64,000 bases of DNA, taken from contig RHPI01000810.1 of the NCBI GenBank assembly GCA_009103225.1, positions 977,080-1,041,079 of the forward strand, in the 5' to 3' direction. The notes under the pieces were generated by a model. The model was not told where the DNA came from, did not search any database, and was given only the letters and a program-made list of their open reading frames with translations. The stretch is from Chlorokybus atmophyticus. Lineage: Eukaryota; Plantae; Mesostigma and Chlorokybus algae. Shown piece by piece: positions 1-31,764 of this stretch; the stretch's first letter is position 1, and each line of letters begins with the position of its first letter. A program made the position numbers and the translations under genes.

Positions 1-603
1 AGCAACCTCAAGGGTACGAAGAGGGAGACACAGGCAAGGCATGCTTGGTACATAAGGCTTTGTATGGGCTTAGACAGGCACCATGTGTCTGGCACATTCG
101 ACTTAGCAAAGAGCTAGAAAAGATGGGCGTACAGCAGTCTGCAGCAGACTCTGGGCTCTTCATTAGTGAAGACGGACAAGTCTGGCTCCTCGTGTATGTT
201 GATGACATTATCCCGGCATCTGCGGATATTGCTGCAATAACCCGAATTAAGGTGACACTGCAATCTGCGTTCGAGATTCGCGACCTTGGAGATGCACACT
301 TGTTCCTCGACATAGTCATCACCAGGATCAAAGATGCACCATCAAGATCACACAGAAGCAGATGGTGCTGTACTTACTCAAGAAGTTCAAGGTACAGGAT
401 GCAAAGGGCAAGGCAACACCACTAAGTGTGGGAGTACAGTTACTTAAGGCACGGGACACTGCTTTGTACTTGACAAGACTGTCTACCCCTACGGTGAGCT
501 AGTAGGAAGTCTCATCTACTTGTCCATTGCTACAAGATCTGACATCGCGCAAGCCGTGGGAGTCTTGGCGAGGTACATGTCAGCACCCATTATCAAGCAC
601 TGG
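1..603 (+). pseudogene. pol: Ty1/copia reverse transcriptase fragment (family B), frameshifted
   Basis: Copia RT motifs [39 protein letters not shown]; reading frame broken near 350-430; continues at 3023 after an insertion. Confidence 0.9.
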
Positions 604-3022
604 ACTCACACACGAGTTATATGCGACACACAGCTCATGCCGGGGGGTTGTTAAATGTTATAGCTTGTTGAAAGTACATGTATAGGCGGCGCCTACATGT
701 AGTCGGTACGATCAGCTTAACCTTCATAGTTACGGGAGTTACGAGAGTTACGAGAGTTACGGGAGTTACGGCAGTTATGGTCAACCATGGTCAACTTTGA
801 CTTTGACCATTGACTTTGACCATTGACTAGTGTTGACTATTGTTGACTTTGACCAGAGTTGACTAGAGTTGACTAGTACTTAGTAGCATAGTATATAAGA
901 CACTGTATACTGCTTAATACAGTGGGTCGCACATTGTCTCTATAGTTGGCGTGCTTGCTGCACTTGTCCTTAGTGTGTGCACACTTGTATGTAGGAGGCA
1001 AATACACACACACTAGGCGCATCACTAGTTCTCAACACTCGAGAGTTGTGGGACACTTTTGTTGACGCCCTACGTGATGATTTTATCAATGAGCAACGGA
1101 AGGTACGTACACAATCTTGGGAATATATATATTTGTAATTTACATGATACTGCGTGCTTATGTCCATTATACATGTGCGCTATGTATCAGAGAGGAGAAC
1201 TTGCCATGCGCAATAATGGACGATGTGTTACATGCGGCACGTGATTTGCAAAAGCTCTGACGTGGTATTGACCGCAGAGCTTCACTCGACAAGTTTGATC
1301 TCGGCCATCTTATACCTGATGGATTTGATGACGAATGATCCGGTTGCACAAGGGTCGCTATGGGTCGATAGAGCGGGCATCGCGCTGGCCCCCCGTAGAT
1401 GCGGCCTGAGACTGCATAGGCGCGGTCTTGTAACTGGTATGCCCCGCACCGGATGCATAAGATCCAGAGTAGCGGGGGGTTTACTGGCCCCGCCCCTTGT
1501 TGGCAGTGTAGGCCACCTTCGCCTTGGGCTTGGGCTGCGCCGCAGCTGCCTCCTTGATTGCCTTCTTAAGGCGCTTTGCCTCTGCATCAACTGTAGTTAG
1601 AGGGTCTCTCGTGAGCTCCTCCACCATTTTCCAACTATGCTTGTTGGCCACTTCCACATGGTGGAACTGCGTGCACACCTCGCCCAATGCTGGTGCACAG
1701 AGCACATGTGAGCAACACTGGTTGCGGCCAATCATGCAGAGGCTCAGAGCCATTGGTTTTAATGCCAGGCGCACCCGCATTGACATCACCATCTCCCACA
1801 TGCAAATGTAATGGCAAACCTGTTGTGCTTTTTTCCTTGCTATGAATAGTCATAGTGTGAATACAAAGGTGGACATGCAAGGGTGTTAAGTGCGGGCCCT
1901 CCCCCCCCTACCGGACTCGGGGGGAGGAGGGATGCGGAACAATGTATGTATATAGATGCCTCTACGTAAATGATAAGCCCGCACCTTCATAAGGCCGATG
2001 ATGCACGCATGTGCATGTTCGCATGAGTAAAGTCCGCACCCTCATGCGTGTCCTATATGTGTGCTCGTGCAAAAGGCCATGCTCAACAAAGAGTGAGCCC
2101 ACCTTTCATGTTGTCTTTGCGGCCTTTGGCAAAGTGGGGATCCTCGAAGAGGTGAGAGGGCACACGGTCGAAGGAGGCCGCCGCCGAGGCAATGTAAGCC
2201 GCCACGTCGACGTGTTGCCGAGCCCGCTTTTTCATGTTCTCCTTCCAAGGGATCGCGGGATCGTCAAAGCGAGTGGCCAATGCCTCCGCACGAGAATGCG
2301 GTGTAGTGGAGTCGCCTTTGTCGCGGCGAAGGATGCTTACAAGTAGCGGGTGGTTGGGCTCAATGACGGGCTCATTATGAGGGATGACGGGCGCCTTCCC
2401 ACGCCTAAGACGCATGTTTTCCGCCTCCAACTCCTCCAACCTCCTCGCCATGGCCTCCGTGGGTGTTATGAACGGGGTGGAAGCGTTGGAGAGCGGGCTT
2501 GCCTCCCTCTTTTTACGCTTGTAAGTGACGACGGGCGGGTCCTCATCATCCTCGTCCTCATCATCATCACCATCACCCTCCTTGTTCACCTCCTCTTCTC
2601 CCACCTCCACGGGGGGGCGCACCCCGTCTCTCCTCACTCGCCGCTCTTCTTTCCTCCTCTTCACTCAAGGTGTGGCAACGCGGACTTGTAGCCCGCGCCA
2701 ACCTATTGGCGGCCAGCCTAGCCGCCTTGGCCGTGGCTTCCACGTCCTCTCCATCGCCATGGGCACTTCTTGACCGTGTGGTGGTCATAGAGGTCGACCG
2801 CCTATTCTTCCTCCTAACCACCCACGCCACCCTCGCCAAGGATGGCGCCGCCGCGCTAGGGTTTCAAGCGACTAGGTAAGGAGCTTGTGACTCACAACTC
2901 ACATCTGGTGAGTGCTTGTGCCCCCAAGTGCCCAAGGCACTAGGGGCACAAGAGTCTTATAACTCATTAACGAGTTCTTGAGTTCATGGGCGCGCATTTC
3001 ATGCGCTTCATGAACTCATATG
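604..3022 (-). mobile_element. TSD-less insertion splitting the copia RT; carries a decayed gag-like ORF (possibly DIRS/tyrosine-recombinase-type retroelement remnant)
   Basis: Removing 604-3022 rejoins CAC TGG|AAG GCG GCT AAA (HW|KAAKGV). Minus-strand ORF pieces at 2573-2839, 2083-2664 and 1481-1801; hairpin-rich right end. Class assignment is inference. Confidence 0.45.
649..1037 (+). repeat. Solo LTR, family A (389 bp)
   Basis: TGTTAAATG...TTCTCAACA; no PBS follows; flanks GGGGT/CTCGA do not match (no TSD). Confidence 0.95.
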
Positions 3023-3565
3023 AAGGCGGCTAAAGGAGTTTTTTGCTACCTTGGCAGCATTGTGAATAAGGGTATCATCTTTGGAAAGACGAAAGACATC
3101 ACATTACATGGCAACTGTGGTGCAGTCTATGCTGGAAACCTCGACACGAGAAAGTCTACCACAAGTTACACTTTTGTAATGGGAGGAGGCGTCGTTAGCT
3201 GGAACAGTCGACTACAACCAACTGTTGCTGCGTCCAGTACTGAGGCCAAGTACATGGCGGCTTCATCTGCGGCGAGGAAGGACTGTGGCTTCGCAAGTTT
3301 GATCACCGACCTTAGGCATGCAGCGAGCTGTGTCACCATTTTATGTGACAACCAAGGAGCACTCAAGCTGAGCATGCACCTCATCACATTTGCCAGGTCG
3401 AAGCATATTGACATTATGCACCCTTTGGTAAGCGAGAAAGTTGCACGTGGGGAAGTGGAGTTCAAGTACTGCAGCACTCAGGACATGCTCGCTGATTGCA
3501 TGACAAAACCACTACCACCAACCAAGTTTCATACATGCTGCATCGAGCTAGGAGTTGAAGGTTAA
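3023..3565 (+). pseudogene. pol: Ty1/copia RT C-terminus/RNase H (family B)
   Basis: KSTTSY..GGGVVSWNSRLQPTVAASSTEAKY, CDNQGA, RSKHIDI, MLADCMTKPL; followed by GCGTGGGAG and an LTR. Confidence 0.92.
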
Positions 3566-3581
3566 GTTGCTTGCGTGGGAG

Positions 3582-3897
3582 TGTTAAAGGTCTCTATGTA
3601 GGTGGCGCCGTAATTAAACTTCTACGATCAACTTATCTTCGGGAGTTATGGTCAACGATCGTTGTGGGAATTACGGGAGTTATAGTCAACCTTAGTCAAT
3701 GTTGACTTTGACCATTGACTTTGACTTTAACTAGTGTTGACTTTGACTAGAGTTGACTAGTGTTGACTAGTGTTGACTAGCACTCACTAGTGTGCTATAT
3801 AAGACACTGTCTGTTGTGTAATACAGTAAGATCCACTCTGCTCTATTGTCAGCGCCACACTTGTGCTTGTCGTTGTTGCTACTGTGCAATCTTAATA
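3582..3897 (+). repeat. 3' LTR of copia family B (316 bp)
   Basis: Starts TGTTAAAG right after the PPT-position motif; ends CTTAATA (CA mutated to TA); TATATAAGACACTGT shared with family A; near-identical copy at 12815-13130. Confidence 0.8.
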
Positions 3898-4087
3898 GTG
3901 CACTACAAAGCATCTACCAAAACTTACTTGTGAAGCGGGGATCATAATAGCTCACAATGCTTCGTGGTAGTCCGTGCGAACGAAAGACATGCTTCATAAC
4001 AAGCTTGCTGCCTCTGGTCCCGTGCCAAATCCAAAACACGGTGCTGAATGTACCACTTTGCTAATTTTGTTAGCAAATACGAGTATA
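3898..4087 (-). pseudogene. pol: Ty3/gypsy integrase core fragment
   Basis: Minus strand HVFRSHGLPRSIVSYYDPRFTSKFW; interrupted at 4088 by a family A element. Confidence 0.85.
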
Positions 4088-4485
4088 TGTTAAATGTTAT
4101 AGCTTGTTGAAAGTACATGTATAGGCGGCGCCTACATGTAGTCGGTACAATCAGCTTAACCTTCATAGTTACGGGAGTTACGAGAGTTACGAGAGTTACG
4201 GGAGTTACGAGAGTTACGAGAGTTATGGTCAACCATGGTCAACTTTGACTTTGACCGTTGACTTTGACCATTGACTAATGTTGACTAGTGTTGACTTTGA
4301 CCAGAGTTGACTAGAGTTGCCTAGTGCTTAGTAGCATAGTATATAAGACACTGTATACTGCTTAATACAGTGGGTCGCACATTGTCTCTATAGTTGGCGT
4401 GCTTGTTGCACTTGTCCTTAGTGTGTGCACACTTGTATGTAAGAGGCAAATACACACACACTAGGCGCATCACTAGTTCTCAACA

Positions 4486-4499
4486 GGTTATGGGCCCAC
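4486..4499 (+). promoter_or_regulatory. Primer-binding site for a 5' half of initiator tRNA-Met
   Basis: GGTTATGGGCCCAC abuts the LTR and is complementary to the tRNAiMet anticodon arm (GTGGGCCCATAACC); the same PBS follows every 5' LTR of the family. Confidence 0.9.
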
Positions 4500-4607
4500 A
4501 CTCGCTTGTGTGATCGCTTGTGCTAGTGAGAGAAAGTGTTGAGCATAGGCGCCTACTAGTAGAGTGTTCTTGGGGAGAGGGTGAGTTGTACTATTGTGTA
4601 GCAAGTA

Positions 4608-5393
4608 ATGGCTAACACTGATAGGATGCCCATCGAGTCCCTTGATCTGCACAACTACGCTTCATGGTCGCTGAAGATGAAGTTGGTGCTGATCCGCAAG
4701 AAGCTTTGGAGTTTTGTCGACCCCACCTCCTCCACATCATTGCGGCCAAGAACAGGTGACACTGGTACCTGGACAGAGAACTCACAATCAGCTTTTGCGC
4801 TGATAGGCTTGCACGTCAAAGACTTCCATCTCCCTCTTATTGCGGATTGCAAGACTGGACGTGAGGCGTGGGAGGTCTTCGACACCCTCTTCAAGGCCAA
4901 TAGCAACTCGCGCAAGTTGCAGCTGAGACGCAAGCTGACACTTCTGAAGATGGAGCACAAAGAGCCAATCCAGAAGTACATCTCGCGTGCAAGGGAGCTT
5001 TGGCAAGACCTTGCAGCAGTGGGCCACGATGTGAAGGAAGAGGAGGTGATGTGGGCAGTCTTAGCTGGCTTAGGAAAGAGCTTTGCTACGCTAGTGACTG
5101 TGTTGGAGTCCTCAGATGTGGTTTTGAAGTTTGCTGATGTAGTGCCTAAGCTGCTAGCTGTGGAAGGCAAGTTGGATGTTCAGGAGATAGAGAATGGTGG
5201 AGAACCTATCGCACTTTCTGCCTCATCTTCTCAACACACACGAAACAGGAGCAAAGCAGGTGGTGGGAAGCCATCACGTGACAAAGAGTGTCACTACTGC
5301 AAGATGAAGGGCCACTTCATTCGCGAGTGCCAGAAGAGGATCCACGATGAGGCAACCAAGGGAGAGCACGCCACGATGGCGATTGCTTTCTAG
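4608..5393 (+). CDS. gag: Copia Gag, 261 aa, intact (UBN2-type core plus CCHC zinc knuckle)
   Basis: NYASWSLKMKLVL, KLQLRRKL, CHYCKMKGHFIREC knuckle; open frame from ATG to TAG. Confidence 0.93.
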   Translation: MANTDRMPIESLDLHNYASWSLKMKLVLIRKKLWSFVDPTSSTSLRPRTGDTGTWTENSQSAFALIGLHVKDFHLPLIADCKTGREAWEVFDTLFKANSNSRKLQLRRKLTLLKMEHKEPIQKYISRARELWQDLAAVGHDVKEEEVMWAVLAGLGKSFATLVTVLESSDVVLKFADVVPKLLAVEGKLDVQEIENGGEPIALSASSSQHTRNRSKAGGGKPSRDKECHYCKMKGHFIRECQKRIHDEATKGEHATMAIAF

Positions 5394-6411
5394 CATTGGT
5401 GAGGACCTCAAGGAGTTGCAGTGGATGGTGTTCGTCCGTCCTCTCCCACTGCAAGGGCGCGTGAAGGACATGCGTAGACGGAGGTCGCAGACACAAAGGT
5501 CTGTGAGAGTTACTGCTAGCCTATGAGTAGTTACTGGTGTTGAGCTGCATACACTAGAGGTTGCATTGCTGTGAGGTTGTTTTTTGGTAGCACACAGGTG
5601 TGCGGTACTAGTTAGAACACTTCACTTGATTGGCATGCAAGGACTGAGTTGTATAGCTAGCTAACAGGAGATGGGAGGGGTGCTTCCTTGGTAGAAGGGT
5701 CTGATCAACCCTTGCACGGACTACACTCTGGTACAGCATTGCTAAGGTAGAGAACTCATTGTAGTTTATAGCATAGTTTGCCATCGAGGGAGTCCTCGAA
5801 ACCATCTGAGCAAGGTCAGGCGTGGCGTGGTGGAACCTGATGCGACAACTATGAGGAGGAAACAAGGAGTAATGGAACCTTGTAGTTCTGCTGGCAGCAC
5901 AAGGAGAAAGATAGTGTCATGGAGACAAGCATCGAGTCCGTGGGAGCAACAGATCCGTGGGAGTGTTCAATGGAGTAAGTTAATGTGGGTAAGCTTGCGA
6001 GAAGATCTTGGAGTTCAAGGTCAAGCTGCTCGCGTGGGAGTGTTAAATGTTATAGCTTGTTGAAAGTACATGTATAGGCGGCGCCTACATGTAGTCGGTA
6101 CGATCAGCTTAACCTTCATTGTTACGGGAGTTACGGGAGTTACGAGAGTTATGGACAACCATGGTCAACTTTGACTTTGACCATTGACTTTGACCATTGA
6201 CTAATGTTGACTAGTGTTGACTTTGACCAGAGTTGACTAGAGTTGACTAGTGCTTAGTAGCATAGTATATAAGACACTGTATACTGCTTAATACAGTGGG
6301 TCGCACATTGTCTCTATAGTTGGCGTGCTTGCTGCACTTGTCCTTAGTGTGTGCACACTTGTATGTACGAGGCAAATACACACACACTAGGCGCATCACT
6401 AGTTCTCAACA

Positions 6412-7189: not shown

Positions 7190-7691
7190 TGTTAAATGTT
7201 ATAGCTTGTTGAAAGTACATGTATAGGCGGCGCCTACATGTAGTCGGTACGATCAGCTTAACCTTCATAGTTACGGGAGTTACGAGAGTCACGAGAGTTA
7301 CGGCAGTTATGGTCAACCATGGTCAACTTTGACTTTGACCATTGACTTTGACCATTGACTAGTGTTGACTAGTGTTGACTTTGACCAGAGTTGACTAGAG
7401 TTGCCTAGTGCTTAGTAGCATAGTATATAAGACACTGTATACTGCTTAATACAGTGGGTCGCACATTGTCTCTATAGTTGGCGTGCTTGTTGCACTTGTC
7501 CTTAGTGTGTGCACACTTGTATGTAAGAGGCAAATACACACACACTAGGCGCATCACTAGTTCTCAACAGGTTATGGGCCCACACTCGCTTGTGTGATTG
7601 CTTGTGCTAGTGAGAGAAAGTGTTGAGCATAGGTGCCTACTAGTCGAGTATTCTTGGGGAGAGGGTGAGTTGTACTATTGTGTAGCAAGTA

Positions 7692-8480
7692 ATGGCTGAT
7701 ACAGATAGGATGCCCATCGAGTCCCTTGATCTGCACAACTACGCTTCATGGTCGCTGAAGATGAAGTTGGTGCTGATCCGCAAGAAGCTTTGGAGTTTTG
7801 TCGACCCCACCTCCTCCACATCATTGCGGCCAAGAACAGGTGACACTGGTACCTGGACAGAGAACTCACAATCAGCTTTTGCGCTGATAGGCTTGCACGT
7901 CAAAGACTTCCATCTCCCTCTTATTGCGGATTGCAAGACTGGACGTGAGGCGTGGGAGGTCTTCGACACCCTCTTCAAGGCCAATAGCAATGCGCGCAAG
8001 TTGCAGCTGAGACGCAAGCTGACACTTTTGAAGATGGAGCACAACGAGCCAATCCAGAAGTACATCTCGCGTGCAAGGGAGCTTTGGCAAGACCTTGCAG
8101 CAGTGGGCCACGACGTGAAGGAAGAGGAGGTGATGTGGGCAGTCTTGGCTGGCTTAGGAAAGAGCTTTGCTACGTTAGTGACTGTGTTAGAGTCCTCAGA
8201 TGTGGTTTTAAAGTTTGCTGATGTAGTGCCTAAGCTGCTAGCTGTGGAAGGCAAGTTTGATGTTCATGAGAATGGTGGAGAACCTATTGCACTTTCTGCC
8301 TCATCTTCTCAACACACACAAAGCAAGAGCAAAGCAGGTGGTGGGAAGCCATCACGTGACAAAGAGTGTCACTACTGCAAGATGAAAGGCCACTTTATTC
8401 GCGAGTGCCAGAAGAGGATCCACGATGAGGCAACCAAGGAGGAGCACGCCACGATGGCGATTGCTTTCCAGCATTGGTGA
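7692..8480 (+). CDS. gag: Copia Gag, 262 aa, intact (stop changed TAG>CAG, 3 extra residues)
   Basis: Near-identical to the 4608 gag. Confidence 0.9.
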   Translation: MADTDRMPIESLDLHNYASWSLKMKLVLIRKKLWSFVDPTSSTSLRPRTGDTGTWTENSQSAFALIGLHVKDFHLPLIADCKTGREAWEVFDTLFKANSNARKLQLRRKLTLLKMEHNEPIQKYISRARELWQDLAAVGHDVKEEEVMWAVLAGLGKSFATLVTVLESSDVVLKFADVVPKLLAVEGKFDVHENGGEPIALSASSSQHTQSKSKAGGGKPSRDKECHYCKMKGHFIRECQKRIHDEATKEEHATMAIAFQHW

Positions 8481-9034
8481 GGACCTCAAGGAGTTGTAGT
8501 GGATGGTGTTCGTCCGTCCTCTCCCATTGCAAGGGCGCGTGAAGGACATGCGCAGACGGAGGTCGCAGACACAAAGGTCTGTGAGAGTTGCTGCTAGCCT
8601 ATGAGTAGTTGCTGGTGTTGAGCTGCATACACTAGAGGTTGCATTGCTGTGGAGTTGTTTTTTGGTAGCACACAGGTGTGCGGTACTGGATAGAACACTT
8701 CAATTAATTGGCATGCAAGGACTGAGTTGTGTAGCTAGCTAACAGGAGATGGGAGGGGTGCTTTCCTTGGTAGAAGGGTCTGATCAACCCTTGCACGGCC
8801 TACACTCTGGTACAGCATTGCTAAGGTAGAGAACTCATTGTAGTTTATAGCATAGTTTGCCATCGAGGGAGTCCTCGAAACCATCTGAGCAAGGTCAGGC
8901 GTGGCGTGGTGGAACCTGATGCGACAACTATGAGGAGGAAACAAGGAGTAATGGAACCTTGTAGTTCTGCTGGCAGCACGAGGAGAAAGATGGTGTCATG
9001 GAGACAAGCATCGAGTCCGTGGGAGCAACAGATC

Positions 9035-11381
9035 TGTTAAATGTTATAGCTTGTTGAAAGTACATGTATAGGCGGCGCCTACATGTAGTCGGTACGATCA
9101 GCTTAACCTTCATAGTTACGGGAGTTACGAGAGTTAGGAGAGTTACGGGAGTTACGGGAGTTACGAGAGTTATGGTCAACCATGGTCAACTTTGACTTTG
9201 ACCGTTGACTTTGACCATTGACTAATGTTGACTAGTGTTGACTTTGACCAGAGTTGACTAGAGTTGACTAGTGCTTAGTAGCATAGTATATAAGACACTG
9301 TATACTGCTTAATACAGTGGGTCGCACATTGTCTCTATAGTTGGCGTGCTTGTTGCACTTGTCCTTAGTGTGTGCACACTTGTATGTAAGAGGCAAATAC
9401 ACACACACTAGGCGCATCACTAGTTCTCAACAGGTTATGGGCCCACACTCGCTTGTGTGATCGCTTGTGCTAGTGAGAGAAAGTGTTGAGCATAGGCGCC
9501 TACTAGTAGAGTGTTTTTGGGGAGAGGGTGAGTTGTACTATTCTGTAGCAAGTAATGGCTGACACTGATAGGATGCCCATCGAGTCCCTTGATCTGCACA
9601 ACTACGCTTCATGGTCGCTGGAGATGAAGTTGGTGCTGATCCGCAAGAAGCTTTGGAGTTTTGTCGACCCCACCTCCTCCACATCATTGCGGCCAAGAAC
9701 AGGTGACACTGGTACCTGGACAGAGAACTCACAATCAGCTTTTGCGCTGATAGGCTTGCACGTCAAAGACTTCCATCTCCCTCTTATTGCGGATTGCAAG
9801 ACTGGACGTGAGGCGTGGGAGGTCTTCGACACCCTCTTCAAGGCCAATAGCAATGCGCGCAAGTTGCAGCTGAGACGCAAGCTGACACTTTTTAAGATGG
9901 AGCACAACGAGCCAATCCAGAAGTACATCTCGCGTGCAAGGGAGCTTTGGCAAGACCTTGCAGCAGTGGGCCACGACGTGAAGGAAGAGGAGGTGATGTG
10001 GGCAGTCTTAGCTGGCTTAGGAAAGAGCTTTGCAACGCTAGTGACTGTGTTGGAGTCCTCAGATGTGGTTTTGAAGTTTGCTGATGTAGTGCCTAAGCTG
10101 CTAGCTGTGGAAGGCAAGTTGGATGTTCATGAGATAGAGAATGGTGGAGAACCTATCGCACTTTTTGCCTCATCTTCTCAACACACACGAAACAGGAGCA
10201 AAGCAGGTGGTGGGAAGCCATCACGTGACAAAGAGTGTCACTACTGCAAGATGAAGGGCCACTTCATTCGCGAGTGCCAAAAGAGGATCCACGATGAGGC
10301 AACCAAGGAGGAGCACGCCACGATGGCGATTGCTTTCTAGCATTGGTGAGGACCTCAAGGAGTTGCAGTGGATGGTGTTCGTCCGTCCTCTCCCACTGCA
10401 AGGGCGCGTGAAGGACATGCGCAGACGGAGGTCGTAGACACAAAGGTCTGTGAGAGTTACTGCTAGCCTATGAGTAGTTACTGGTGTTGAGCTGCATACA
10501 CTAGAGGTTGCATTGCTGTGGAGTTGCTTTTTGGTAGCACACAGGTGTGCGGTACTGGATAGAACACTTCAATTGATTGGCATGCAAGGACTGAGTTGTA
10601 TAGCTAGCTAACAGGAGATGGGAGGGGTGCTTTCCTTGGTAGAAGGGTCTGATCAACCCTTGCACGGCCTACACTCTGGTACAGCATTGCTAAGGTAGAG
10701 AACTCAGTGTAGTTTATAGCATAGTTTGCCATTTAGGGAGTCTTCGAAACCACTTGAGCAAGGTCAGGCGTGGCGTGGTGGAACCTAATGCGACAACTAT
10801 GAGGAGGAAACAAGGAGTATTGAAATCTTGTAATGCTGGTGGCAGCATGAGGAGAAAGATGGTGTCATGGAGACAAGCATCGAGTCCGTGGGAGCAACAG
10901 ATCCGTTGGAGTGTTCAATGGAGTAAGTTAATGTGGGTAAGCTTGCGAGAAGATCTTGGAGTTCAAGGTCAAGCTGCTCGCGTGGGAGTGTTAAATGTTA
11001 TAGCTTGTTGAAAGTACATGTATAGGCGGCGCCTACATGTAGTCGGTACGATCAGCTTAACCTTCATAGTTACGGGAGTTACGAGAGTTACGAGAGTTAC
11101 GGGAGTTACGGCAGTTACGGCAGTTATGGTCAACCATGGTCAACTTTGACTTTGACCGTTGACTTTGACCATTGACTAATGTTGACTAGTGTTGACTTCG
11201 ACCAGAGTTGACTAGAGTTGACTAGTGCTTAGTAGCATAGTATATAAGACACTGTATACTGCTTAATACAGTGGGTCGCACATCGTCTCTATAGTTGGCG
11301 TGCTTGTTGCACTTGTCCTTAGTGTGTGCACACTTGTATGTAATAATACACACACACTAGGCGCATCACTAGTTCTCAACA
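9035..11381 (+). mobile_element. Family A element (inner, nested)
   Basis: LTRs 9035-9432 and 10989-11381; TSD AGATC at 9030-9034 and 11382-11386. Confidence 0.95.
9555..10340 (+). CDS. gag: Copia Gag, 261 aa, intact
   Basis: Near-identical to the 4608 gag; zinc knuckle retained. Confidence 0.92.
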   Translation: MADTDRMPIESLDLHNYASWSLEMKLVLIRKKLWSFVDPTSSTSLRPRTGDTGTWTENSQSAFALIGLHVKDFHLPLIADCKTGREAWEVFDTLFKANSNARKLQLRRKLTLFKMEHNEPIQKYISRARELWQDLAAVGHDVKEEEVMWAVLAGLGKSFATLVTVLESSDVVLKFADVVPKLLAVEGKLDVHEIENGGEPIALFASSSQHTRNRSKAGGGKPSRDKECHYCKMKGHFIRECQKRIHDEATKEEHATMAIAF

Positions 11382-11851
11382 AGATCCGTGGGAGTGTTCA
11401 ATGGAGTAAGTCAATGTGGGTAAGCTTGCGAGAAGATCTTGGAGTTCAAGGTCAAGCTGCTCGCGTGGGAGTGTTAAATGTTATAGCTTGTTGAAAGTAC
11501 ATGTATAGGCGGCGCCTACATGTAGTCGGTACGATCAGCTTAACCTTCATAGTTACGGGAGTTACGAGAGTCACGAGAGTTACGGCAGTTATGGTCAACC
11601 ATGGTCAACTTTGACTTTGACCATTGACTTTGACCATTGACTAGTGTTGACTAGTGTTGACTTTGACCAGAGTTGACTAGAGTTGACTAGTGCTTAGTAG
11701 CATAGTATATAAGACACTGTATACTGCTTAATACAGTGGGTCGCACATTGTCTCTATAGTTGGCGTGCTTGTTGCACTTGTCCTTAGTGTGTGCACACTT
11801 GTATGTAAGAGGCAAATACACACACACTAGGCGCATCACTAGTTCTCAACA

Positions 11852-12480: not shown

Positions 12481-12814
12481 CAAGCAATTAAATGTTAACT
12501 ATTATGTTGAACCGCACACGTAACACTTGCACACGCTGCTACTTGCTTCACCACGTCCACCGTGCTTCGCCACGCCGTTACACGTGTGTATGGCACCCAC
12601 CTCGATTGGTGATGGTTAAATAAGCTCCACCTTCCTTTGCACGCTGTGAATTTTTTGCCCCTTGTGTCCATGCATGTTGAAAGCTTCTCCCCTAGACTGA
12701 TTACCACGCTCTTGCTTGCTCCCACGCCTGCAGTCAGCATTTGTTGCAAAAGACTTGAAGTACAACGCGATGAGACACTCCGCGATGCGTATAGTTGAAT
12801 TGCTTGCATGGGAG

Positions 12815-13130
12815 TGTTAAAGGTCTCTATGTAGGTGGCGCCTTAACTAAACTTCTACGATCAACTTATTTTCGAAAGTTATGGTCAACGGTCGTTGTGG
12901 GAATTACGGCAGTTATGGTCAACCTTGGTCAACGTTGACTTTGACCATTGACTTTGACTTTAACTAGTGTTAACTTTGACTAGAGTTGACTAGTGTTGAC
13001 TAGTGTTGACTAGCACTCATAAGTGTGCTATATAAGACACTGTCTGTTGTGTAATACAGTAAGATCCACTCTGCTCTATTGTCAGCGCCACACTTGTGCT
13101 TGTCGTTGTTGCTATTGTGCAATCTTAATA
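12815..13130 (+). repeat. Family B LTR, second copy
   Basis: Near-identical to 3582-3897, with the same CTTAATA end and the same junction into gypsy integrase. Confidence 0.85.
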
Positions 13131-13462
13131 GTGCACTACAAAGCGTCTACCAAAACTTACTTGTGAAGCGGGGATCATGATAGCTCACAATGCTTCATGG
13201 TAGTCCGTGCGAACGAAAGACATGCTTCATAACAAGCTTGCTGCCTCTGGTGCCGTGCCAAATCCACAACACGGTGCTGAATGTACCATTTTGCTAATTT
13301 TGTTAGTGAATACGAGTATTGCGTGGTACCCTTTTGTTGTTTTCGTTAACCCCGTCATAAAGTCCATAGTAACTTGCTCCCTCTTGGACAATGGCACGGG
13401 AAGAGGTGGCTGCAACCCACCTGGCTTTTGGTTGCTTGCTTTCACCCTTTGACATGCGTCGC
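13131..13462 (-). pseudogene. pol: Ty3/gypsy integrase fragment (uninterrupted duplicate of 3898-4087 plus 6417-6558)
   Basis: QVTMDFMTGLTKTTKGYHAILVFTNKISKMVH. Confidence 0.88.
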
Positions 13463-13830
13463 ACGACTAGGACATTGATGCTTGAAGCGACCACACTCGC
13501 CACAACGCCAACACTCCTTGCCGTTACCATAAGAGCCTTTCTGCACCAAAAGCTGTAGCTGCTCCTAATCCTTCTTCCCACCCTCTCTTTTGCAAGCGCT
13601 GCTCTCTTTGAAGAAGCCGTGATAATACGCCATCAAGTGTTAACTCCTCCGTGGCAGACTCCATGATAGTCACCACCACCTTGTACTCCTTTGGCAACCC
13701 GTACAACACAACCCACACCACTTTTTGCTCCTTTAGCTCGTGCCCAACACTCAACAAGTCCTTCTACAGCGCCTTTGCTCGCGCCACGAACTTGGTGATG
13801 GGCACCATGCGCCGAGCTGTTGCCAATAAT
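13463..13830 (-). pseudogene. gag: Copia gag fragment of a more distant family
   Basis: KDLLSVGHELKEQKVVWVVLYGLPKEY aligns by eye with family A QDLAAVGHDVKEEEVMWAVLAGLGKSF; decayed knuckle CWRCGECGRFKHQC. Confidence 0.75.
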
Positions 13831-14760: not shown

Positions 14761-15779
14761 TGTTGAGAACTAGTGATGCGCGTAGTGTGTGTGTATTTGC
14801 CTCTTACATACAAGTGTGCACACACTAAGGACAAGTGCAGCAAGCACGCCAATTATAGAGACAATGTGCGACCCACTGTATTAAGCAGTATACAGTGTCT
14901 TATATATATACTATGCTACTAAGTACTAGTCAACTCTAGTCAACTCTGGTCAAAGTCAACACTAGTCAACACTAGTCAATGGTCAAAGTCAACATTGACC
15001 ATGGTTGACCATAACTGCCGTAACTCCCGTAACTCTCGTAACTCCCATAACTATAAAGGTTAAGCTGATCGTACCAACTACATGTAGGCGCCGCCTATAC
15101 ATGCACTTTCAACAAGCTATAACATTTAACACTCCCACGCGAGCAGCTTGACCATGAACTCCAAGTTCTTCTCGCAAGCTTACCCACATTAACTTACTTC
15201 ATTGAACACTTCCACGGATTTGATGCTCCCACGGACTTGATGATTGTCTCCATGACACCATCCTTCTCCTCGTGCTGCCAGCAAAACTACAAGGTTCCAA
15301 TACTCTTTGTTTCCTCCTCATAGTTGTCGCATCAGGTTCCACCACGCCACGCCTGACCTTGCTCAAGTGGTTTTGAAGACTCCCTAAATGGCAAACTATG
15401 CTATAAACTACACTGAGTTCTCTACCTTAGCAATGCTGTACCAGAGTGTAGGCCGTGCAAGGGTTGATCAGACCCTTCTACCAAGGAAGCACCCCTCCCA
15501 TCTCCTGTTAGCTAGCTATACAACCCAGTCCTTGCATGCCAATTAAGTGAAGTGTTCTAACTAGTACCGTACACCTGTGTGCTACCAAAAAACAACTCCA
15601 CAGCAATGCAACCTCTAGTGTATGCAGCTCAACACCAGCAACTACTCATAGGCTAGCAGTAACTCTTACAGACCTTTGTGTCTGCGATCTCCGTCTATGC
15701 ATGTCCTTCACGCGCCCTTGCAGTGGGAGAGGACGGACGAACACCATCCACTGCAACTCCTTGAGGTCCTCACCAATGC

Positions 15780-16558
15780 TAGAAAGCAATTGCCATCGTG
15801 GCGTGCTCCTCCTTGGTTGCCTCATTGTGGATCCTCTTCGGGCACTCGCGAATGAAGTGGCCCTTCATCTTGCAGTAGTGACACTATTTGTCACGTGATG
15901 GCTTCCCACCACCTGCGTTGCTACGTGTGTGTTGAGAAGATGAGGCAGAAAGTGCAATTGGTTCTCCACCATTCTCTATCTCCTGAACATCCAACTTGCC
16001 TTTCACAGCTAGCAGCTTAGGCACTACATCAGCAAACTTCAAAACCACATCTGAGGACTCCAACACAGTCACTAGCGTAGCAAAGCTCTTTCCTAAGCCA
16101 GCTAAGACTGCCCACATCACCTCCTCTTCCTTCACGTCGTGGCCCACTGCTGCAAGGTCTTGCCAAAGCTCCCTTGCACGCGAGATGTACTTCTGAATTG
16201 GCTCTTTGTGCTCCATCTTCAAAAGTGTCAGCTTGCGTCTCAGCTGCAACTTGCGCGAGTTGCTGTTGGTCTCGAAGAGGGTGTCGAAGACCTCCCACGC
16301 CTCACGTCCAGTCTTGCAATCCGCAATAAGAGGGAGATGGAAGTCTTTGACGTGCAAGCCTATCAGCGCAAAAGCTGATTGTGAGTTCTCTGTCCTGGTA
16401 CCAGTGTCACCTGTTCTTGGCCGCAATGATGTGGAGGAGGTGGGATCGACAAAACTTTAGAGCTTCTTGCGGATCAGCACCAACTTCATCTTCAGCGACC
16501 ATGAAGCGTAGTTGTGCAGATCAAGGGACTCGATGGGCATCCTATTTGTGTCAGCCAT
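15780..16558 (-). pseudogene. gag: Family A gag with two premature stops
   Basis: TAA replacing W near 16457; TAG after RDK at 15884. Confidence 0.88.
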
Positions 16559-17803
16559 TGCTTGCTACACAATAGTACAACTCACCCTCTCCCCAAGAAC
16601 ACTCTACTAGTAGGTGCCTATGCTCAACACTTTCTCTCACTAGCACAAGCGATCACACAAGCGAGTGTGGGCCCATAACCTGTTGAGAACTAGTGATGCG
16701 CCTAGTGTGTGTATATTTGCCTCTTACATACAAGTGTGCACACATTAAGGACAAGTGCAGCAAGCACGCCAACTATAGAGACAATGTGCGACCCACTGTA
16801 TTAAGCAGTATACAGTGTCTTATATATATACTATGCTACTAAGTACTAGTCAACTCTAGTCAACTCTGGTCAAAGTCAACACTAGTCAACACTAGTCAAT
16901 GGTCAAAGTCAACATTGACCATGGTTGACCATAACTGCCGTAACTCCCGTAACTCTCGTAACTCCCATAACTATAAAGGTTAAGCTGATCGTACCAACTA
17001 CATGTAGGCGCCGCCTATACATGCACTTTCAACAAGCTATAACATTTAACACTCCCACGCGAGCAGCTTGACCATGAACTCCAAGTTCTTCTCGCAAGCT
17101 TACCCACATTAACTTACTTCATTGAACACTTCCACGGATTTGATGCTCCCACGGACTTGATGATTGTCTCCATGACACCATCCTTCTCCTCGTGCTGCCA
17201 GCAAAACTACAAGGTTCCAATACTCTTTGTTTCCTCCTCATAGTTGTCGCATCAGGTTCCACCACGCCACGCCTGACCTTGCTCAAGTGGTTTTGAAGAC
17301 TCCCTAAATGGCAAACTATGCTATAAACTACACTGAGTTCTCTACCTTAGCAATGCTGTACCAGAGTGTAGGCCGTGCAAGGGTTGATCAGACCCTTCTA
17401 CCAAGGAAGCACCCCTCCCATCTCCTGTTAGCTAGCTATACAACCCAGTCCTTGCATGCCAATTAAGTGAAGTGTTCTAACTAGTACCGTACACCTGTGT
17501 GCTACCAAAAAACAACTCCACAGCAATGCAACCTCTAGTGTATGCAGCTCAACACCAGCAACTACTCATAGGCTAGCAGTAACTCTTACAGACCTTTGTG
17601 TCTGCGATCTCCGTCTATGCATGTCCTTCACGCGCCCTTGCAGTGGGAGAGGACGGACGAACACCATCCACTGCAACTCCTTGAGGTCCTCACCAATGCT
17701 AGAAAGCAATTGCCATCGTGGCGTGCTCCTCCTTGGTTGCCTCATTGTGGATCCTCTTCGGGCACTCGCGAATGAAGTGGCCCTTCATCTTGCAGTAGTG
17801 ACA

Positions 17804-18478
17804 CTATTTGTCACGTGATGGCTTCCCACCACCTGCGTTGCTACGTGTGTGTTGAGAAGATGAGGCAGAAAGTGCAATTGGTTCTCCACCATTCTCTATC
17901 TCCTGAACATCCAACTTGCCTTTCACAGCTAGCAGCTTAGGCACTACATCAGCAAACTTCAAAACCACATCTGAGGACTCCAACACAGTCACTAGCGTAG
18001 CAAAGCTCTTTCCTAAGCCAGCTAAGACTGCCCACATCACCTCCTCTTCCTTCACATCGTGGCCCACTGCTGCAAGGTCTTGCCAAAGCTCCCTTGCACG
18101 CGAGATGTACTTTTGGATTGGCTCTTTGTGCTCCATCTTCACAAGTGTCAGCTTGCGTCTCAGCTGCAACTTGCGCGAGTTGCTGTTGGCCTTAAAGAGG
18201 GTGTCGAAGACCTCCCACGCCTCACGTCCAGTCTTGCAATCCGCAATAAGAGGGAGATGGAAGTCTTTGACGTGCAAGCCTATCAGCGCAAAAGCTGATT
18301 GTGAGTTCTCTGTCCAGGTACCAGTGTCACCTGTTCTTGGCCGCAATGATGTGGAGGAGGTGGGGTCGACAAAACTCCAGAGCTTCTTGCGGATCAGCAC
18401 CAACTTCATCTTCAGCGACCATGAAGCGTAGTTGTGCAGATCAAGGGACTCGATGGGCATCCTATCTGTGTCAGCCAT
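17804..18478 (-). pseudogene. gag: Family A gag truncated just before the zinc knuckle (224 aa)
   Basis: GAG>TAG after RDK; the same stop is present in the neighbouring unit. Confidence 0.88.
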
Positions 18479-18989
18479 TGCTTGCTACACAATAGTACAA
18501 CTCACCCTCTCCCCAAGAACACTCTACTAGTAGGTGCCTATGCTCAACACTTTCTCTCACTAGCACAAGCGATCACACAAGCGAGTGTGGGCCCATAACC
18601 TGTTGAGAACTAGTGATGCGCCTAGTGTGTGTATATTTGCCTCTTACATACAAGTGTGCACACATTAAGGACAAGTGCAGCAAGCACGCCAACTATAGAG
18701 ACAATGTGCGACCCACTGTATTAAGCAGTATACAGTGTCTTACATACTATGCTACTAAGCACTGGTCAACTCTGGTCAACTCTGGTCAAAGTCAACACTA
18801 GTCAACACTGGTCAATGGTCAAAGTCAGCGGTCAAAGTCAAAGTTGACCATGGTTGACCATGACTGCCGTAACTGCCGTAACTCTCCTAACTCTTGTAAC
18901 TCCCGTAACTATAAAGGTTAAGCTGATCGTACCAATTACATGTAGGCGCCACCTATACATGTACTTTCAACAAGCTATAACATTTAACA

Positions 18990-23177: not shown

Positions 23178-24652
23178 TGTTAAAGGTTATAGGTTGTGGA
23201 AGGTATGTACCTTCCACAACATGTATATAGGCGGCGCCTACATGCAGTTGGTACGATTAGCTTAACCTTAATATTTATTAGATTTACACGAGTTACAGCA
23301 GTCACGGTCATTATGGTTAACCGTGGTCAACTTTTACTTGCAGCTGTTGACTTTGACCATTGACTTTAACTAGAGTTGCCTAAAGTTGACCAGTGCTTAG
23401 TAGCATAGTATATAAGATACTGTATACTGCTTAATACAATGGGTCGCACATTGTCTCTGTAGTTGGCGTGCTGTTTGCACTTGTCTTTAGTGTGTGCACA
23501 CTGATATGCGAGAGGCGCATCACTCATTCTCAATAGGTTATGGGCCCACACTTGCTTGTGCTAGTGAGAGAAAGTGTTGAGCACGGGAGCCTACTGGTAG
23601 AGTATTGTTGGGGAGAGGGTGAGTTGTATTATTGTGTAGCGAGCAATGGCTGACACAGATAGGATCCCCTTAAAGTCCCTCGATCTGCACAGCTGTATTT
23701 CATGGTCGATAAGGATGAAATTGGTGCTGATCCGCAAGAAGCTTTGGATATTTGTGGACCCCACCTCCTTCACATCATTACGGCCTAAAACATGTGACAT
23801 TAATACCTGGACACAGAACTCCCGATTAGCTTTTGCACTAACATGCTTGAAAGTTAAAGGCTTCCATCTCCCTCTTATTATAAATTGCAAGACTGGACGT
23901 GAGGCGTGGGAGGTATTCAACACCCTTTTTAGGGCCAACAGCAATGCGCGCAAGTTGCAACTGAGGCACAAGCTCACATTCTTGAAGACTGAGCACAAAG
24001 AGCCAGTCCCGAAGTAGATCACGCTTGCAAGGGAGCTTTTGCAAGACCTTGCAGCAGTGGGCTACGATATGGAGGAAGAGAAGGTGATGTGGGCAGTCTT
24101 AGCTGGCGTAGGCAAGAGCTTTACTACACTAGTGACTTTGTTGGAGTCCTCAGATGTGGTGTTGAAGTTTGCTACTGTAATACCAAAGTTGCTTGCTGTG
24201 GAAGGCAAGTTAAGTGTTGAAGAGATGGAGCATGGTGGCGAACCTATCGCAGTTGCTGCCTCATCTTCTCAACACACACGAAACAGGAGCAAAGCAGGTG
24301 GTGGGAAGCCATCACGTGACAAAGAGTGTCACTACTGTAAGATGAAGGGCCACTTCATTCGCGAGTGCCAAAAGAGGATCCACGATGAGGCAACCAAGGA
24401 GGAGCACGCCACGATGGCGATTGCTTTCTAGCATTGGTGAGGACCTGAAGGAGTTGCAGTGGATGGTGTTCGTCTGTCCTCTCCAACTGCAAGGGCGTGT
24501 GAAGGACATGCGCAGACGGAGGTCGCAGACACAAAGGTCTGTGAGAGTTACTGCTAGCCTATGAGTAGTTGCTGGTGTTGAGCTGCATACACTAGAGGTT
24601 GCATTGCTGTGGAGTTGTTTTTTGGTAGCACACAGGTGTGCGGTACTGGATA
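23178..24652 (+). mobile_element. Older, diverged family A-like element (5' LTR, PBS, broken gag), 3'-truncated
   Basis: LTR 23178-23535 (TGTTAAAGG...CTCAATA), PBS at 23536, gag 23646-24431 with internal stop/frameshift near 24015-24040. Confidence 0.85.
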
Positions 24653-25565
24653 GGTTTTGCCAAAGCTCCCTTGCACGCGAGATGTACTTCTGTATTGGCT
24701 CGTTGTGCTCCATCTTCAGAAGTGTCAGCTTGCGTCTCAGCTGCAACTTGCGCGAGTTGCTATTGGCCTTGAAGAGGGTGTCGAAGACCTCCCACGCCTC
24801 ACGTCCAGTCTTGCAATCCGCAATAAGAGGGAGATGGAAGTCTTTGACGTGCAAGCCTATCAGCGCAAAAGCTGATTGTGAGTTCTCTGTCCAGGTACCA
24901 GTGTCACCTGTTCTTGGCCGCAATGATGTGGAGGAGGTGGGGTCGACAAAACTCCAAAGCTTCTTGCGGATCAGCACCAACTTCATCTTCAGCGACCATG
25001 AAGCGTAGTTGTGCAGATCAAGGGACTCGATGGGCATCCTATCTGTGTCAGCCATTACTTGCTACACAATAGTACAACTCACCCTCTCCCCAAGAACACT
25101 CTTCTAGTAGGCACCTATGCTCAACACTTTCTCTCACTAGCACAAGCAATCACACAAGCGAGTGTGGGCCCATAACCTGTTGAGAACTAGTGATGCGCCT
25201 AGTGTGTGTGTATTTGCCTCTTACATACAAGTGTGCACACATTAAGGACAAGTGCAACAAGCACGCCAACTATAGAGACAATGTGCGACCCACTGTATTA
25301 AGCAGTATACAGTGTCTTATATACTATGCTACTAAGCACTAGTCAACTCTAGTCAACTCTGGTCAAAGTCAACACTAGTCAACACTAGTCAATGGTCAAA
25401 GTCAACGGTCAAAGTCAAAGTTGACCATGGTTGACCATAACTGCCGTAACTCCCGTAACTCCCGTAACTCTCGTAACTCTCGTAACTATAAAGGTTAAGC
25501 TGATCGTACCGACTACATGTAGGCGCCGCTATACATGTACTTTCAACAAGCTATAACATTCAACA
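24652..25565 (-). mobile_element. Family A fragment: 5' LTR (25178-25565), PBS and 5' half of gag
   Basis: Inverted relative to the 23178 element and joined at ~24652; the LTR end abuts the interior of another LTR. Confidence 0.88.
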
Positions 25566-31725: not shown

Positions 31726-31764
31726 TGTTGAGAACTAGTGATGCGCCTAGTGTGTGTGTATTTG

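What the first reader, a model, noticed from the sequence alone, without database searches (positions are those of the whole stretch)
4088..6411. Recently amplified Gag-only copia retroelement that keeps an intact Gag and has lost Pol
Seen: about 10 copies in 36 kb of LTR-PBS-gag(261 aa)-~650 bp non-coding-LTR, ~2.3 kb long. Four gags are fully open, including the CCHC knuckle; paired LTRs differ by only ~0.3-2%; five insertions have perfect 5-bp TSDs. Established: TR-GAG-type non-autonomous elements are known from land plants. Inference: this family supplies its own capsid, perhaps to package its RNA preferentially or to compete with its helper, and borrows PR/IN/RT/RH. The combination with half-tRNA priming and self-nesting is unusual, and this is the best candidate for an undescribed system in the window.
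Basis: partly seen in the sequence, partly recalled or inferred. Interest (0 to 1): 0.78.

Follow-up and report, generated by a model that had tools for sequence, protein, structure and literature searches.

The report
Capsid-only copia retrotransposon, known type
This is a young, locally amplified jumping gene of the streptophyte alga Chlorokybus that keeps only its capsid (Gag) gene, under purifying selection; such "TR-GAG" elements are already described in flowering plants and brown algae.

Summary
Window 4088-6411 is a 2,324-bp element: LTR, PBS, 261-aa gag, about 640 bp non-coding, PPT, LTR, with a perfect GTATA target-site duplication. A paralogous empty site lies at 13315-13319. About ten further copies fill 56% of the first 36 kb. 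Five have perfect 5-bp duplications, three are nested in copies of the same family, and four keep gag open.

The gag has evolved as a coding sequence. Variable sites by codon position are 17:7:34, omega is about 0.4 (p about 1e-3), and its only indels are two in-frame 6-bp deletions. The protein is a full-length homologue of the Drosophila copia capsid protein.

No Pol remnant is detectable. A defective autonomous copia in the window shares the PPT, the LTR start, the LTR core and the last 37 bp of pol, so it marks the likely parent or helper lineage.

This is a TR-GAG element, a class described in angiosperms and Ectocarpus and shown to transpose in Arabidopsis. Half-tRNA-Met priming is normal for algal and bryophyte copia lineages. 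One apparent copy comes from a block duplication that ends at an assembly gap.

Verdict: a new member of a known kind, in Chlorokybus. Interest is modest.

The parts
4083..4087 (+). Target-site duplication GTATA, 5' copy. The 3' copy is at 6412-6416.
   Evidence: Sequence read and flanks. The paralogous empty site 13315-13319 carries one copy of it.
4088..4485 (+). 5' LTR, 398 bp, TGTTA...CAACA. U3 carries 9-bp (AGTTACGAG) and TTGACT-type tandem repeats and a TATATAAG box.
4486..4499 (+). Primer-binding site GGTTATGGGCCCAC, complementary to the anticodon stem-loop of initiator tRNA-Met (half-tRNA priming).
   Evidence: Thirteen bases equal the antisense tRNAi-Met probe printed in PMC5648532 and PMC1797187. 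The PBS is kept in all copies that have a 5' LTR.
4608..5393 (+). gag ORF, 261 aa: DUF4219, then copia-type capsid (UBN2), then a CCHC zinc knuckle at residues 228-241.
   Evidence: Pfam PF14223 at 1.5e-31. A profile of the Gag hits PDB 8vvw 'Copia VLP protein' at 3.4e-38 over its full length. The AlphaFold model has pLDDT 79 and its best fold match is the copia capsid.
5394..6031 (+). Internal non-coding region with stops in all frames. Only its last 37 bp (with the PPT stretch, 6004-6040) match the end of pol of the autonomous relative.
6032..6040 (+). Polypurine tract region GCGTGGGAG, directly upstream of the 3' LTR.
   Evidence: The same motif precedes the family-B LTR at 3573-3581.
6041..6411 (+). 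3' LTR, 371 bp. It differs from the 5' LTR by nine substitutions and a 27-bp loss, equal to three 9-bp repeat units.
7190..11851 (+). Outer copy with TSD GGTCT, gag ORF 7692-8480 (262 aa) and LTR pair 0.26% diverged. It is interrupted in its non-coding region by the nested copy 9035-11381.
9035..11381 (+). Nested copy with TSD AGATC and gag ORF 9555-10340 (261 aa).
14761..18989 (-). Tandem LTR-internal-LTR-internal-LTR array sharing LTR 16681-17051. Its flanks are discordant (CCTGC and GTACT). The gags carry one and two stop codons.
23178..24647 (+). Diverged, chimeric copy: LTR, same PBS, and a gag with one stop. It is truncated at internal position 1122.
24652..27646 (-). Copy 25560-27646, whose gag has one stop. 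Its 3' LTR is interrupted at position 167 by a further copy, 24652-25565, which is itself truncated.
31726..35907 (-). Oldest copy with paired LTRs: TSD CCTGC, LTR pair 5.3% diverged, gag frameshifted and an internal deletion. Its 3' LTR holds the nested young copy 31765-34093 (+), which has TSD ATTTG and gag ORF 32276-33061.
649..1037 (+). Solo LTR of the family, without a TSD, lying inside the pol of the family-B copia remnant.
3..3930 (+). Defective autonomous copia relative (family B): RT 3-615 with frameshifts, RNase H 3014-3565, PPT 3573-3581, and an LTR starting at 3582 whose 3' end is undefined. It is the candidate parent or helper lineage.
   Evidence: tblastn with copia polyproteins P0071 and P0151. 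The shared PPT/LTR start and about 80% identical LTR core come. The last 37 bp of pol are 84% identical to the end of the non-coding region.
12794..13467 (+). Paralogous copy of the insertion target, without the element. The empty site is at 13315-13319.
   Evidence: 3561-4086 matches 12794-13319 at 95.2% and 6411-6563 matches 13315-13467 at 96.7%, overlapping by 5 bp.

Best explanation
A family of non-autonomous Ty1/copia LTR retrotransposons of the TR-GAG type in the streptophyte alga Chlorokybus.

Shown:
- Each 2.3-kb unit has everything needed in cis: LTRs with TG...CA ends, a TATA-containing U3, a PBS for the 5' half of initiator tRNA-Met, and a PPT.
- Each unit has one gene, a full-length copia capsid/nucleocapsid protein.
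- It has no protease, integrase, RT or RNase H.
- At least five copies integrated by the retroviral route (5-bp TSDs, an empty site, nesting).
- gag has been under purifying selection since the copies last shared an ancestor that already had this Gag-only layout.

Inferred:
- The family arose from an autonomous copia like the family-B remnant beside it, by loss of everything between the Gag/protease junction and the last ~40 bp of pol.
- Its RNA is reverse-transcribed and integrated by the Pol of that or a related family supplied in trans.
- Its own Gag helps its propagation, most likely because Gag binds the RNA it is translated from, or adds to the particle-forming pool. Copies with a broken gag therefore leave fewer descendants.
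- After insertion, the dense cluster was further reshaped by ectopic recombination: the tandem array, the chimeric copies and the solo LTR.
For: - Structure, TSDs and empty site.
- Gag identity: Pfam PF14223 at 1.5e-31; PDB copia VLP protein 8vvw at 3.4e-38; fold match to the copia capsid.
- ORF end: the nearest relatives carry the protease domain from residue ~254-275, exactly where this ORF ends.
- No Pol: tblastn, tblastx, blastx and a Gag HMM all find nothing significant in the non-coding region.
- Selection, pairwise: dN/dS 0.10-0.62 among seven young copies.
- Selection, site counts: 27 non-synonymous against 29 synonymous changes, where 71% non-synonymous is expected; omega 0.38, p=3e-4. 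With CpG transitions removed, omega is 0.39, p=1e-3.
- Selection, other signs: codon positions 17:7:34, p=6.5e-5; gag indels are only two independent in-frame 6-bp deletions, against 1-, 1- and 4-bp indels in the non-coding part. Variable-site density is 0.072 in gag against 0.103 in the non-coding part.
- Diverged copy: dN/dS 0.43-0.52 at dS about 0.3.
- Helper lineage: family B shares the PPT, the LTR start, the LTR core and the pol end.
- Host: the window ORF 53365-55014(-) is 100% identical to eukprot jgi/Chlat1 Chrsp103S00003.
- Precedent: TR-GAG class and its mobility (PMC4350172, PMC8704663, PMC12477816).
Against: - No intact helper is in the window. The family-B copy is frameshifted and interrupted.
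- No expression or protein data could be consulted.
- The omega estimate rests on seven related copies from a single 36-kb cluster where gene conversion is evident. The sites are therefore not fully independent events.
- Part of the constraint could have been imported by recombination with the gag of an autonomous element.
- The origin of about 600 bp of the non-coding region is unexplained.
- The genome-wide copy number and distribution are unknown.
Confidence: 0.8

Rival explanations
1. The open gag frames are only a by-product of youth. The copies are recent deletion derivatives with no need for their own Gag, and the low dN/dS reflects selection that acted on gag inside autonomous elements. 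It would reach these copies through repeated recombination or template switching with a helper.
For: - LTR pairs are only 0.26-2.4% diverged.
- Recombination and gene conversion among copies is evident: the two tandem units have identical non-coding parts but 10 differences in gag, and two copies are chimeric.
Against: - All young copies share the same non-coding region and the same deletion structure, so the constraint was measured within a Gag-only lineage.
- Differences between copies (3-5% in the non-coding part) exceed the LTR-pair differences. Even singleton changes show omega about 0.33.
- Two independent in-frame deletions were tolerated, but no frameshifts occur in six of the seven young copies.
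- No autonomous gag close enough to act as a donor is in the window.
Confidence: 0.12
2. The cluster is mainly the product of DNA-level duplication (segmental or tandem duplication, or assembly error) rather than retrotransposition.
For: - Block 17676-20172 equals 34599-37088 at 96.4%, including the same 5' flank, and it ends at a 23-N gap.
- The array 14761-18989 is LTR-I-LTR-I-LTR with discordant flanks.
- The solo LTR has no TSD.
Against: - Five different perfect TSDs occur in five different sequence contexts.
- There is one empty paralogous site.
- There are three nested insertions at different positions within the element.
Confidence: 0.04
3. The Gag acts chiefly as an inhibitor or competitor of the helper family, in the manner of Ty1 p22 or Drt2 (dominant-negative capsid). 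It would be kept because it tempers helper activity, to the benefit of the element or the host.
For: - The fold search recovers Gag-derived restriction factors as structural relatives of the C-terminal capsid domain (7nli, 7nlh, 9rxy).
- gag is under purifying selection.
Against: - The protein is a full-length Gag with N-terminal domain, capsid and zinc knuckle, not a truncated C-terminal domain.
- It sits in a mobile, multi-copy element that itself needs the helper.
- No data on helper activity are available.
Confidence: 0.04

Closest known systems
[quoted passage not shown] 2015, PMC4350172). Examples: Coffea TR-GAG1/2, and Arabidopsis AT5TE33540 of ATCOPIA63 (PMC8704663).
   Same: - LTRs, PBS, PPT and a 5-bp TSD.
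- Shorter than 4 kb.
- A single ORF encoding a copia-type (UBN2, PF14223) Gag with a zinc knuckle.
- No RT, INT or RH.
- A related autonomous family in the same genome.
   Different: - The host is an early-diverging streptophyte alga (Chlorokybus), not an angiosperm.
- Gag is shorter: 261 aa against 433-562 aa.
- The PBS is for half tRNA-Met, whereas Coffea TR-GAG1 uses tRNA-Leu.
- Here there is sequence evidence for purifying selection on gag. I found no mention of such a test in the TR-GAG papers searched.
Gag-only Copia families of the brown alga Ectocarpus: Copia-N1_Ec32 and Copia-11_Ec32 (PMC12477816), and four TR-GAG families (PMC4350172).
   Same: Algal, non-autonomous Copia elements with a single ORF homologous to gag.
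   Different: The host lineage is unrelated (stramenopile).
Drosophila copia and its 270-aa VLP protein, made from the spliced 2-kb RNA (PDB 8vvw, 8s41).
   Same: - Full-length homology and the same fold of the Gag product.
- The same half-tRNAi-Met priming (PMC5371799, PMC10886601).
- A Gag-only message exists.
   Different: In copia the Gag-only product comes from a subgenomic RNA of an autonomous element. Here the Gag-only layout is fixed in the DNA of a separate, non-autonomous family.
TRIM, LARD and BARE-2 non-autonomous LTR retrotransposons.
   Same: Trans-mobilised derivatives that keep LTR, PBS and PPT.
   Different: TRIM and LARD have no ORF. BARE-2 is the converse case: its gag is defective and its pol is kept.

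Membership tests
Ty1/copia (Pseudoviridae) LTR retrotransposon | Direct LTRs ending TG...CA, flanked by a 5-bp target-site duplication | tested here: met
   There are five perfect TSDs, and an empty site.
Ty1/copia (Pseudoviridae) LTR retrotransposon | Copia-type Gag (UBN2 / Retrotran_gag_2) with a CCHC knuckle | tested here: met
   PF14223 at 1.5e-31. PDB copia VLP protein at 3.4e-38. C228, C231, H236 and C241 are invariant or nearly invariant in the alignment.
Ty1/copia (Pseudoviridae) LTR retrotransposon | Pol encoding PR-INT-RT-RH (autonomy) | tested here: not met
   No Pol similarity lies between gag and the PPT. The element is therefore a non-autonomous derivative.
TR-GAG (Chaparro et al. 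2015) | LTR-retrotransposon hallmarks (LTR, PBS, PPT, 5-bp TSD) and length under 4 kb | tested here: met
   2,324 bp.
TR-GAG (Chaparro et al. 2015) | A single ORF that encodes GAG, with no RT motif anywhere in the element | tested here: met
TR-GAG (Chaparro et al. 2015) | Transcription and mobility in trans | not testable with these tools
   Past mobility is shown by TSDs and nesting. Present expression and the identity of the helper need RNA-seq and the whole genome.
Half-tRNA-Met-primed copia lineages (Osser / Bryco / part of Gymco-II; PMC6317226) | PBS complementary to the anticodon-stem/loop half of initiator tRNA-Met | tested here: met
   GGTTATGGGCCCA at 4486-4498 equals 13 nt of the antisense tRNAi-Met sequences printed in PMC5648532 and PMC1797187. 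No Chlorokybus tRNA gene lies in the window.
Half-tRNA-Met-primed copia lineages (Osser / Bryco / part of Gymco-II; PMC6317226) | Placement of RT/INT in that clade | not tested
   The element has no RT. The family-B RT fragment was not placed in a tree, because no reference set was available.
TRIM / LARD | No protein-coding capacity (TRIM under 1 kb; LARD over 4 kb) | tested here: not met
   There is an intact 261-aa gag and the length is 2.3 kb.
Domesticated Gag / Gag-derived restriction factor (Ty1 p22, Drt2, Fv1-like) | Host-fixed or truncated Gag gene no longer part of a mobile unit | tested here: not met
   It is a multi-copy element with LTRs and distinct TSDs, and its Gag is full length.

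The most novel reading that the evidence does not exclude
The Gag-only layout may be an ancient or repeatedly evolved strategy across the green lineage, in which the element's own capsid gives it preferential packaging over its helper. In addition, the extreme local self-nesting (56% of 36 kb, and three of about eight insertions landing in copies of itself) may reflect regionally targeted, possibly centromere-like, integration borrowed from the helper's integrase. Related half-tRNA-Met copia lineages behave this way at moss centromeres.
Probability: 0.15. Interest if true: 0.55.

Novelty: new member of a known kind. Interest (0 to 1): 0.3.

Why it matters
- It extends TR-GAG elements to one of the algal lineages most distant from land plants among streptophytes.
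- It supplies something the class has largely lacked: sequence-level evidence that the retained gag is kept by selection within the Gag-only lineage, not merely left undecayed.
- That makes the question [quoted passage not shown] testable in a small algal genome.
- It does not reveal a new kind of system.

Tried and rejected
1. Pol or gag remnants in the ~640-bp non-coding region.
- Tried: sensitive blastn and tblastx against the window, tblastn with copia polyproteins, blastx against all 158 fetched proteins, and a Gag HMM against six-frame translations of five copies.
- Result: only the last 37 bp match pol. Weak blastx hits to Gag residues ~95-135 (E 0.05-9) were not confirmed by the profile (E above 2), so I rejected them.

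2. Rfam scan of the whole window: no family found. ARAGORN found no tRNA.

3. LTR-age paradox. The inner nested copy is 1.8% diverged and the outer 0.26%. Four of the seven differences lie in the 9-bp tandem-repeat tract, which leaves 3 against 1. That is not significant, so I dropped it as evidence for conversion.

4. Brown-algal origin, and a link to the Ectocarpus centromeric retrotransposons. I considered this after reading PMC11541908 and the 2025 bioRxiv preprint. I rejected it once a host gene matched Chlorokybus.

6. The word-index protein search with Gag gave only seven hits at 41% identity or less. The exhaustive search gave thousands of copia Gags, none above 47% identity. The family itself is therefore not in those protein libraries.

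All rate estimates use natural copies only.
Full report
**What is there**

The stated interval is exact. From, the parts are:
- 5' LTR 4088-4485, starting TGTTA and ending CAACA.
- PBS GGTTATGGGCCCAC, 4486-4499.
- A 261-aa ORF, 4608-5393.
- About 640 bp with stops in every frame.
- GCGTGGGAG (PPT), 6032-6040.
- 3' LTR 6041-6411.
- GTATA on both sides, at 4083-4087 and 6412-6416.

A blastn map with this copy as reference, together with the flanks of every LTR, gives these further units:
- A solo LTR at 649-1037.
- An outer copy 7190-11851 (TSD GGTCT), interrupted in its non-coding part by an inner copy 9035-11381 (TSD AGATC).
- A minus-strand LTR-I-LTR-I-LTR array at 14761-18989.
- A diverged copy at about 23178-24647.
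- A truncated copy 24652-25565 (-), inserted in the 3' LTR of copy 25560-27646 (-).
- A copy 31765-34093 (TSD ATTTG), nested in the 3' LTR of copy 31726-35907 (-) (TSD CCTGC).

The family makes up 56% of window 1-35907. Four gags are open: 4608, 7692 (262 aa), 9555 and 32276. The others carry one or two stops or frameshifts. Substitution divergence of paired LTRs is 0.26, 0.77, 1.78, 2.43 and 5.3%. Length differences come from copy-number changes of a 9-bp repeat in U3.

**Transposition or duplication**

Both processes acted, but transposition dominates.
- Five different perfect TSDs lie in five different contexts.
- The target of the reference copy exists a second time in the window without the element. 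3561-4086 matches 12794-13319 and 6411-6563 matches 13315-13467, and the two matches overlap by exactly the 5-bp TSD.

There is also DNA-level rearrangement.
- Block 17676-20172 equals 34599-37088 at 96.4%, including 1.2 kb of identical 5' flank. The upstream unit of the tandem array is therefore the same insertion as the 35907 copy.
- That block ends at a 23-N gap (20173-20195), so an assembly artefact cannot be excluded.
- Within the block, flank and LTR differ by about 1.4% but the gag part differs by 3.5-8%.
- The two tandem units have identical non-coding parts (0/610) yet 10 differences in gag.
- The 'old' copy is about 15% diverged up to roughly codon 205 and about 3% after that.

Ectopic recombination or conversion has therefore reshaped the cluster. 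The apparent paradox of an inner copy 'older' than its host copy shrinks to 3 against 1 substitutions once the repeat tract is set aside.

**What the ORF encodes**

- Pfam gives Retrotran_gag_2 at 1.5e-31, plus DUF4219 and a zinc knuckle.
- A profile of the four open copies plus 41 relatives hits the solved Drosophila 'Copia VLP protein' 8vvw at 3.4e-38 over its full length.
- An AlphaFold model (pLDDT 79) has the copia capsid structures 8vvw and 8s41 as its only significant fold matches.
- The exhaustive protein search finds 6,683 relatives, none above 47% identity.
- In the nearest relatives, the protease domain starts at residue ~254-275. That is exactly where this ORF stops. The element therefore ends its coding capacity at the Gag/protease junction.

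**No Pol, and a candidate parent**

tblastn with full copia polyproteins finds only gag in every copy. Sensitive DNA, translated and profile searches of the non-coding part find nothing, with one exception: its last 37 bp are 84% identical to the end of the pol ORF of a neighbouring copia remnant.

That remnant (family B) consists of:
- RT at 3-615, with frameshifts.
- RNase H at 3014-3565.
- The same GCGTGGGAG|TGTTAAA junction of PPT and LTR.
- An LTR core about 80% identical, with the same repeat architecture and TATA box.

It is defective, so it marks the parental or helper lineage without being a working helper.

**Selection on gag**

- Among seven young copies, pairwise dN/dS is 0.10-0.62.
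- Counting variable sites gives 27 non-synonymous and 29 synonymous changes. With the transition bias of the non-coding part, 71% should be non-synonymous. This gives omega 0.38, p=3e-4.
- Removing CpG transitions gives omega 0.39, p=1e-3.
- Changes fall 17:7:34 on codon positions 1:2:3 (p=6.5e-5). The only gag indels in these seven copies are two independent in-frame 6-bp deletions. The non-coding part has 1-, 1- and 4-bp indels.
- Singletons also show omega about 0.33. Together with inter-copy divergence exceeding LTR-pair divergence, this says that most differences arose before insertion, in source copies elsewhere.
- The diverged copy gives dN/dS 0.43-0.52 at dS about 0.3.
- Because all young copies share the same non-coding region, this constraint operated in a lineage that was already Gag-only.

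Caveats: the sample is small, comes from a single locus, and shows evident conversion.

**Host**

The ORF at 53365-55014(-) is 100% identical to eukprot 'jgi/Chlat1/584/Chrsp103S00003'. From my own knowledge, Chlat1 is the JGI portal name of Chlorokybus atmophyticus, an early-diverging streptophyte alga. The sequence is not human, animal or crop.

**Comparison with what is known**

- The element meets every structural criterion of TR-GAG elements (PMC4350172). These are described in angiosperms, and four families are described in Ectocarpus.
- Gag-only Copia families were confirmed in the curated Ectocarpus library (PMC12477816).
- A TR-GAG was caught transposing in Arabidopsis ddm1 (PMC8704663).
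- The PBS equals 13 nt of the antisense initiator tRNA-Met sequence printed in two papers.
- Half-tRNA-Met priming is established for Drosophila copia and Ty5 (PMC5371799, PMC10886601). It is the typical PBS of the Osser, Bryco and part of the Gymco-II lineages (PMC6317226).
- I found no paper on such elements in Chlorokybus.

**Verdict**

The mechanistic reading, a Gag-encoding parasite of an autonomous copia, is the best explanation, and it is strengthened by the selection tests. It is nevertheless a new member of a known class, not an undescribed system.

Still inferred: the identity and integrity of the helper, the expression of the Gag, and why Gag is retained.

No genome-wide census was possible with the tools at hand.

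Noticed in passing
window 17676-20172 and 34599-37088; N run 20173-20195: A 2.5-kb block (the 5' half of an element plus 1.2 kb of flank) occurs twice at 96.4% identity, and one copy ends exactly at a 23-N assembly gap. Flank and LTR are about 1.4% diverged, but the gag part is 3.5-8% diverged, which suggests later conversion of one copy. It is either a real segmental duplication or an assembly artefact.
   Followed up: partly
window 14761-18989 (-): An LTR-internal-LTR-internal-LTR array with a shared middle LTR and discordant flanks (CCTGC and GTACT). The two non-coding parts are identical, while the gags differ at 10 sites. It is probably the product of unequal recombination between two insertions.
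   Followed up: partly
window 23178-24647 (+) and 24652-25565 (-): The diverged copy switches from about 15% to about 3% divergence near codon 205. It then abuts an oppositely oriented truncated young copy head-to-head, with internal position 1122 joined to position 524. This is a rearrangement or inversion junction of unknown origin.
   Followed up: partly
window 3-3930: Family-B copia remnant. Its pol is split between residues ~1145 and ~1139 of the reference polyprotein by a 2.4-kb insert (616-3013). The insert starts with a TSD-less solo LTR of the Gag-only family, followed by about 2 kb of unidentified sequence. That sequence contains an acidic 193-aa ORF (2083-2664, -) with no Pfam match.
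   Followed up: partly
window 11787-12086 (-), 13227-13445 (-), and the target of the 4088 insertion: Ty3/gypsy fragments on the minus strand. RT_RNaseH_2 scores 6e-14 at 11787-12086. An integrase-like ORF, judged by eye only, lies at 13227-13445, and its paralogue is the insertion target of the reference copy.
   Followed up: partly
window 4655-5170 (-) and the same place in five other copies: An antisense 171-aa stop-free frame (TTG start) inside gag is kept in six copies. It is serine/threonine-rich and is most likely a by-product of gag codon usage rather than a gene.
   Followed up: no
LTR position 233 (window 4320 / 6246 and 7404 / 11686 approx.): In two independent elements (4088 and 7190), the 5' LTR has C and the 3' LTR has A at the same site. 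This could be a parallel change or conversion between neighbouring LTRs. It is a single site only.
   Followed up: no
window 42000-64000: A gene-bearing, GC-richer (55-62%) part of the window. It holds the Chlorokybus gene Chrsp103S00003 (SAM and Tudor domains, 53365-55014, -) and two RRM-containing ORFs (44562-45539 and 60035-60739). The retrotransposon island therefore borders ordinary genes.
   Followed up: partly
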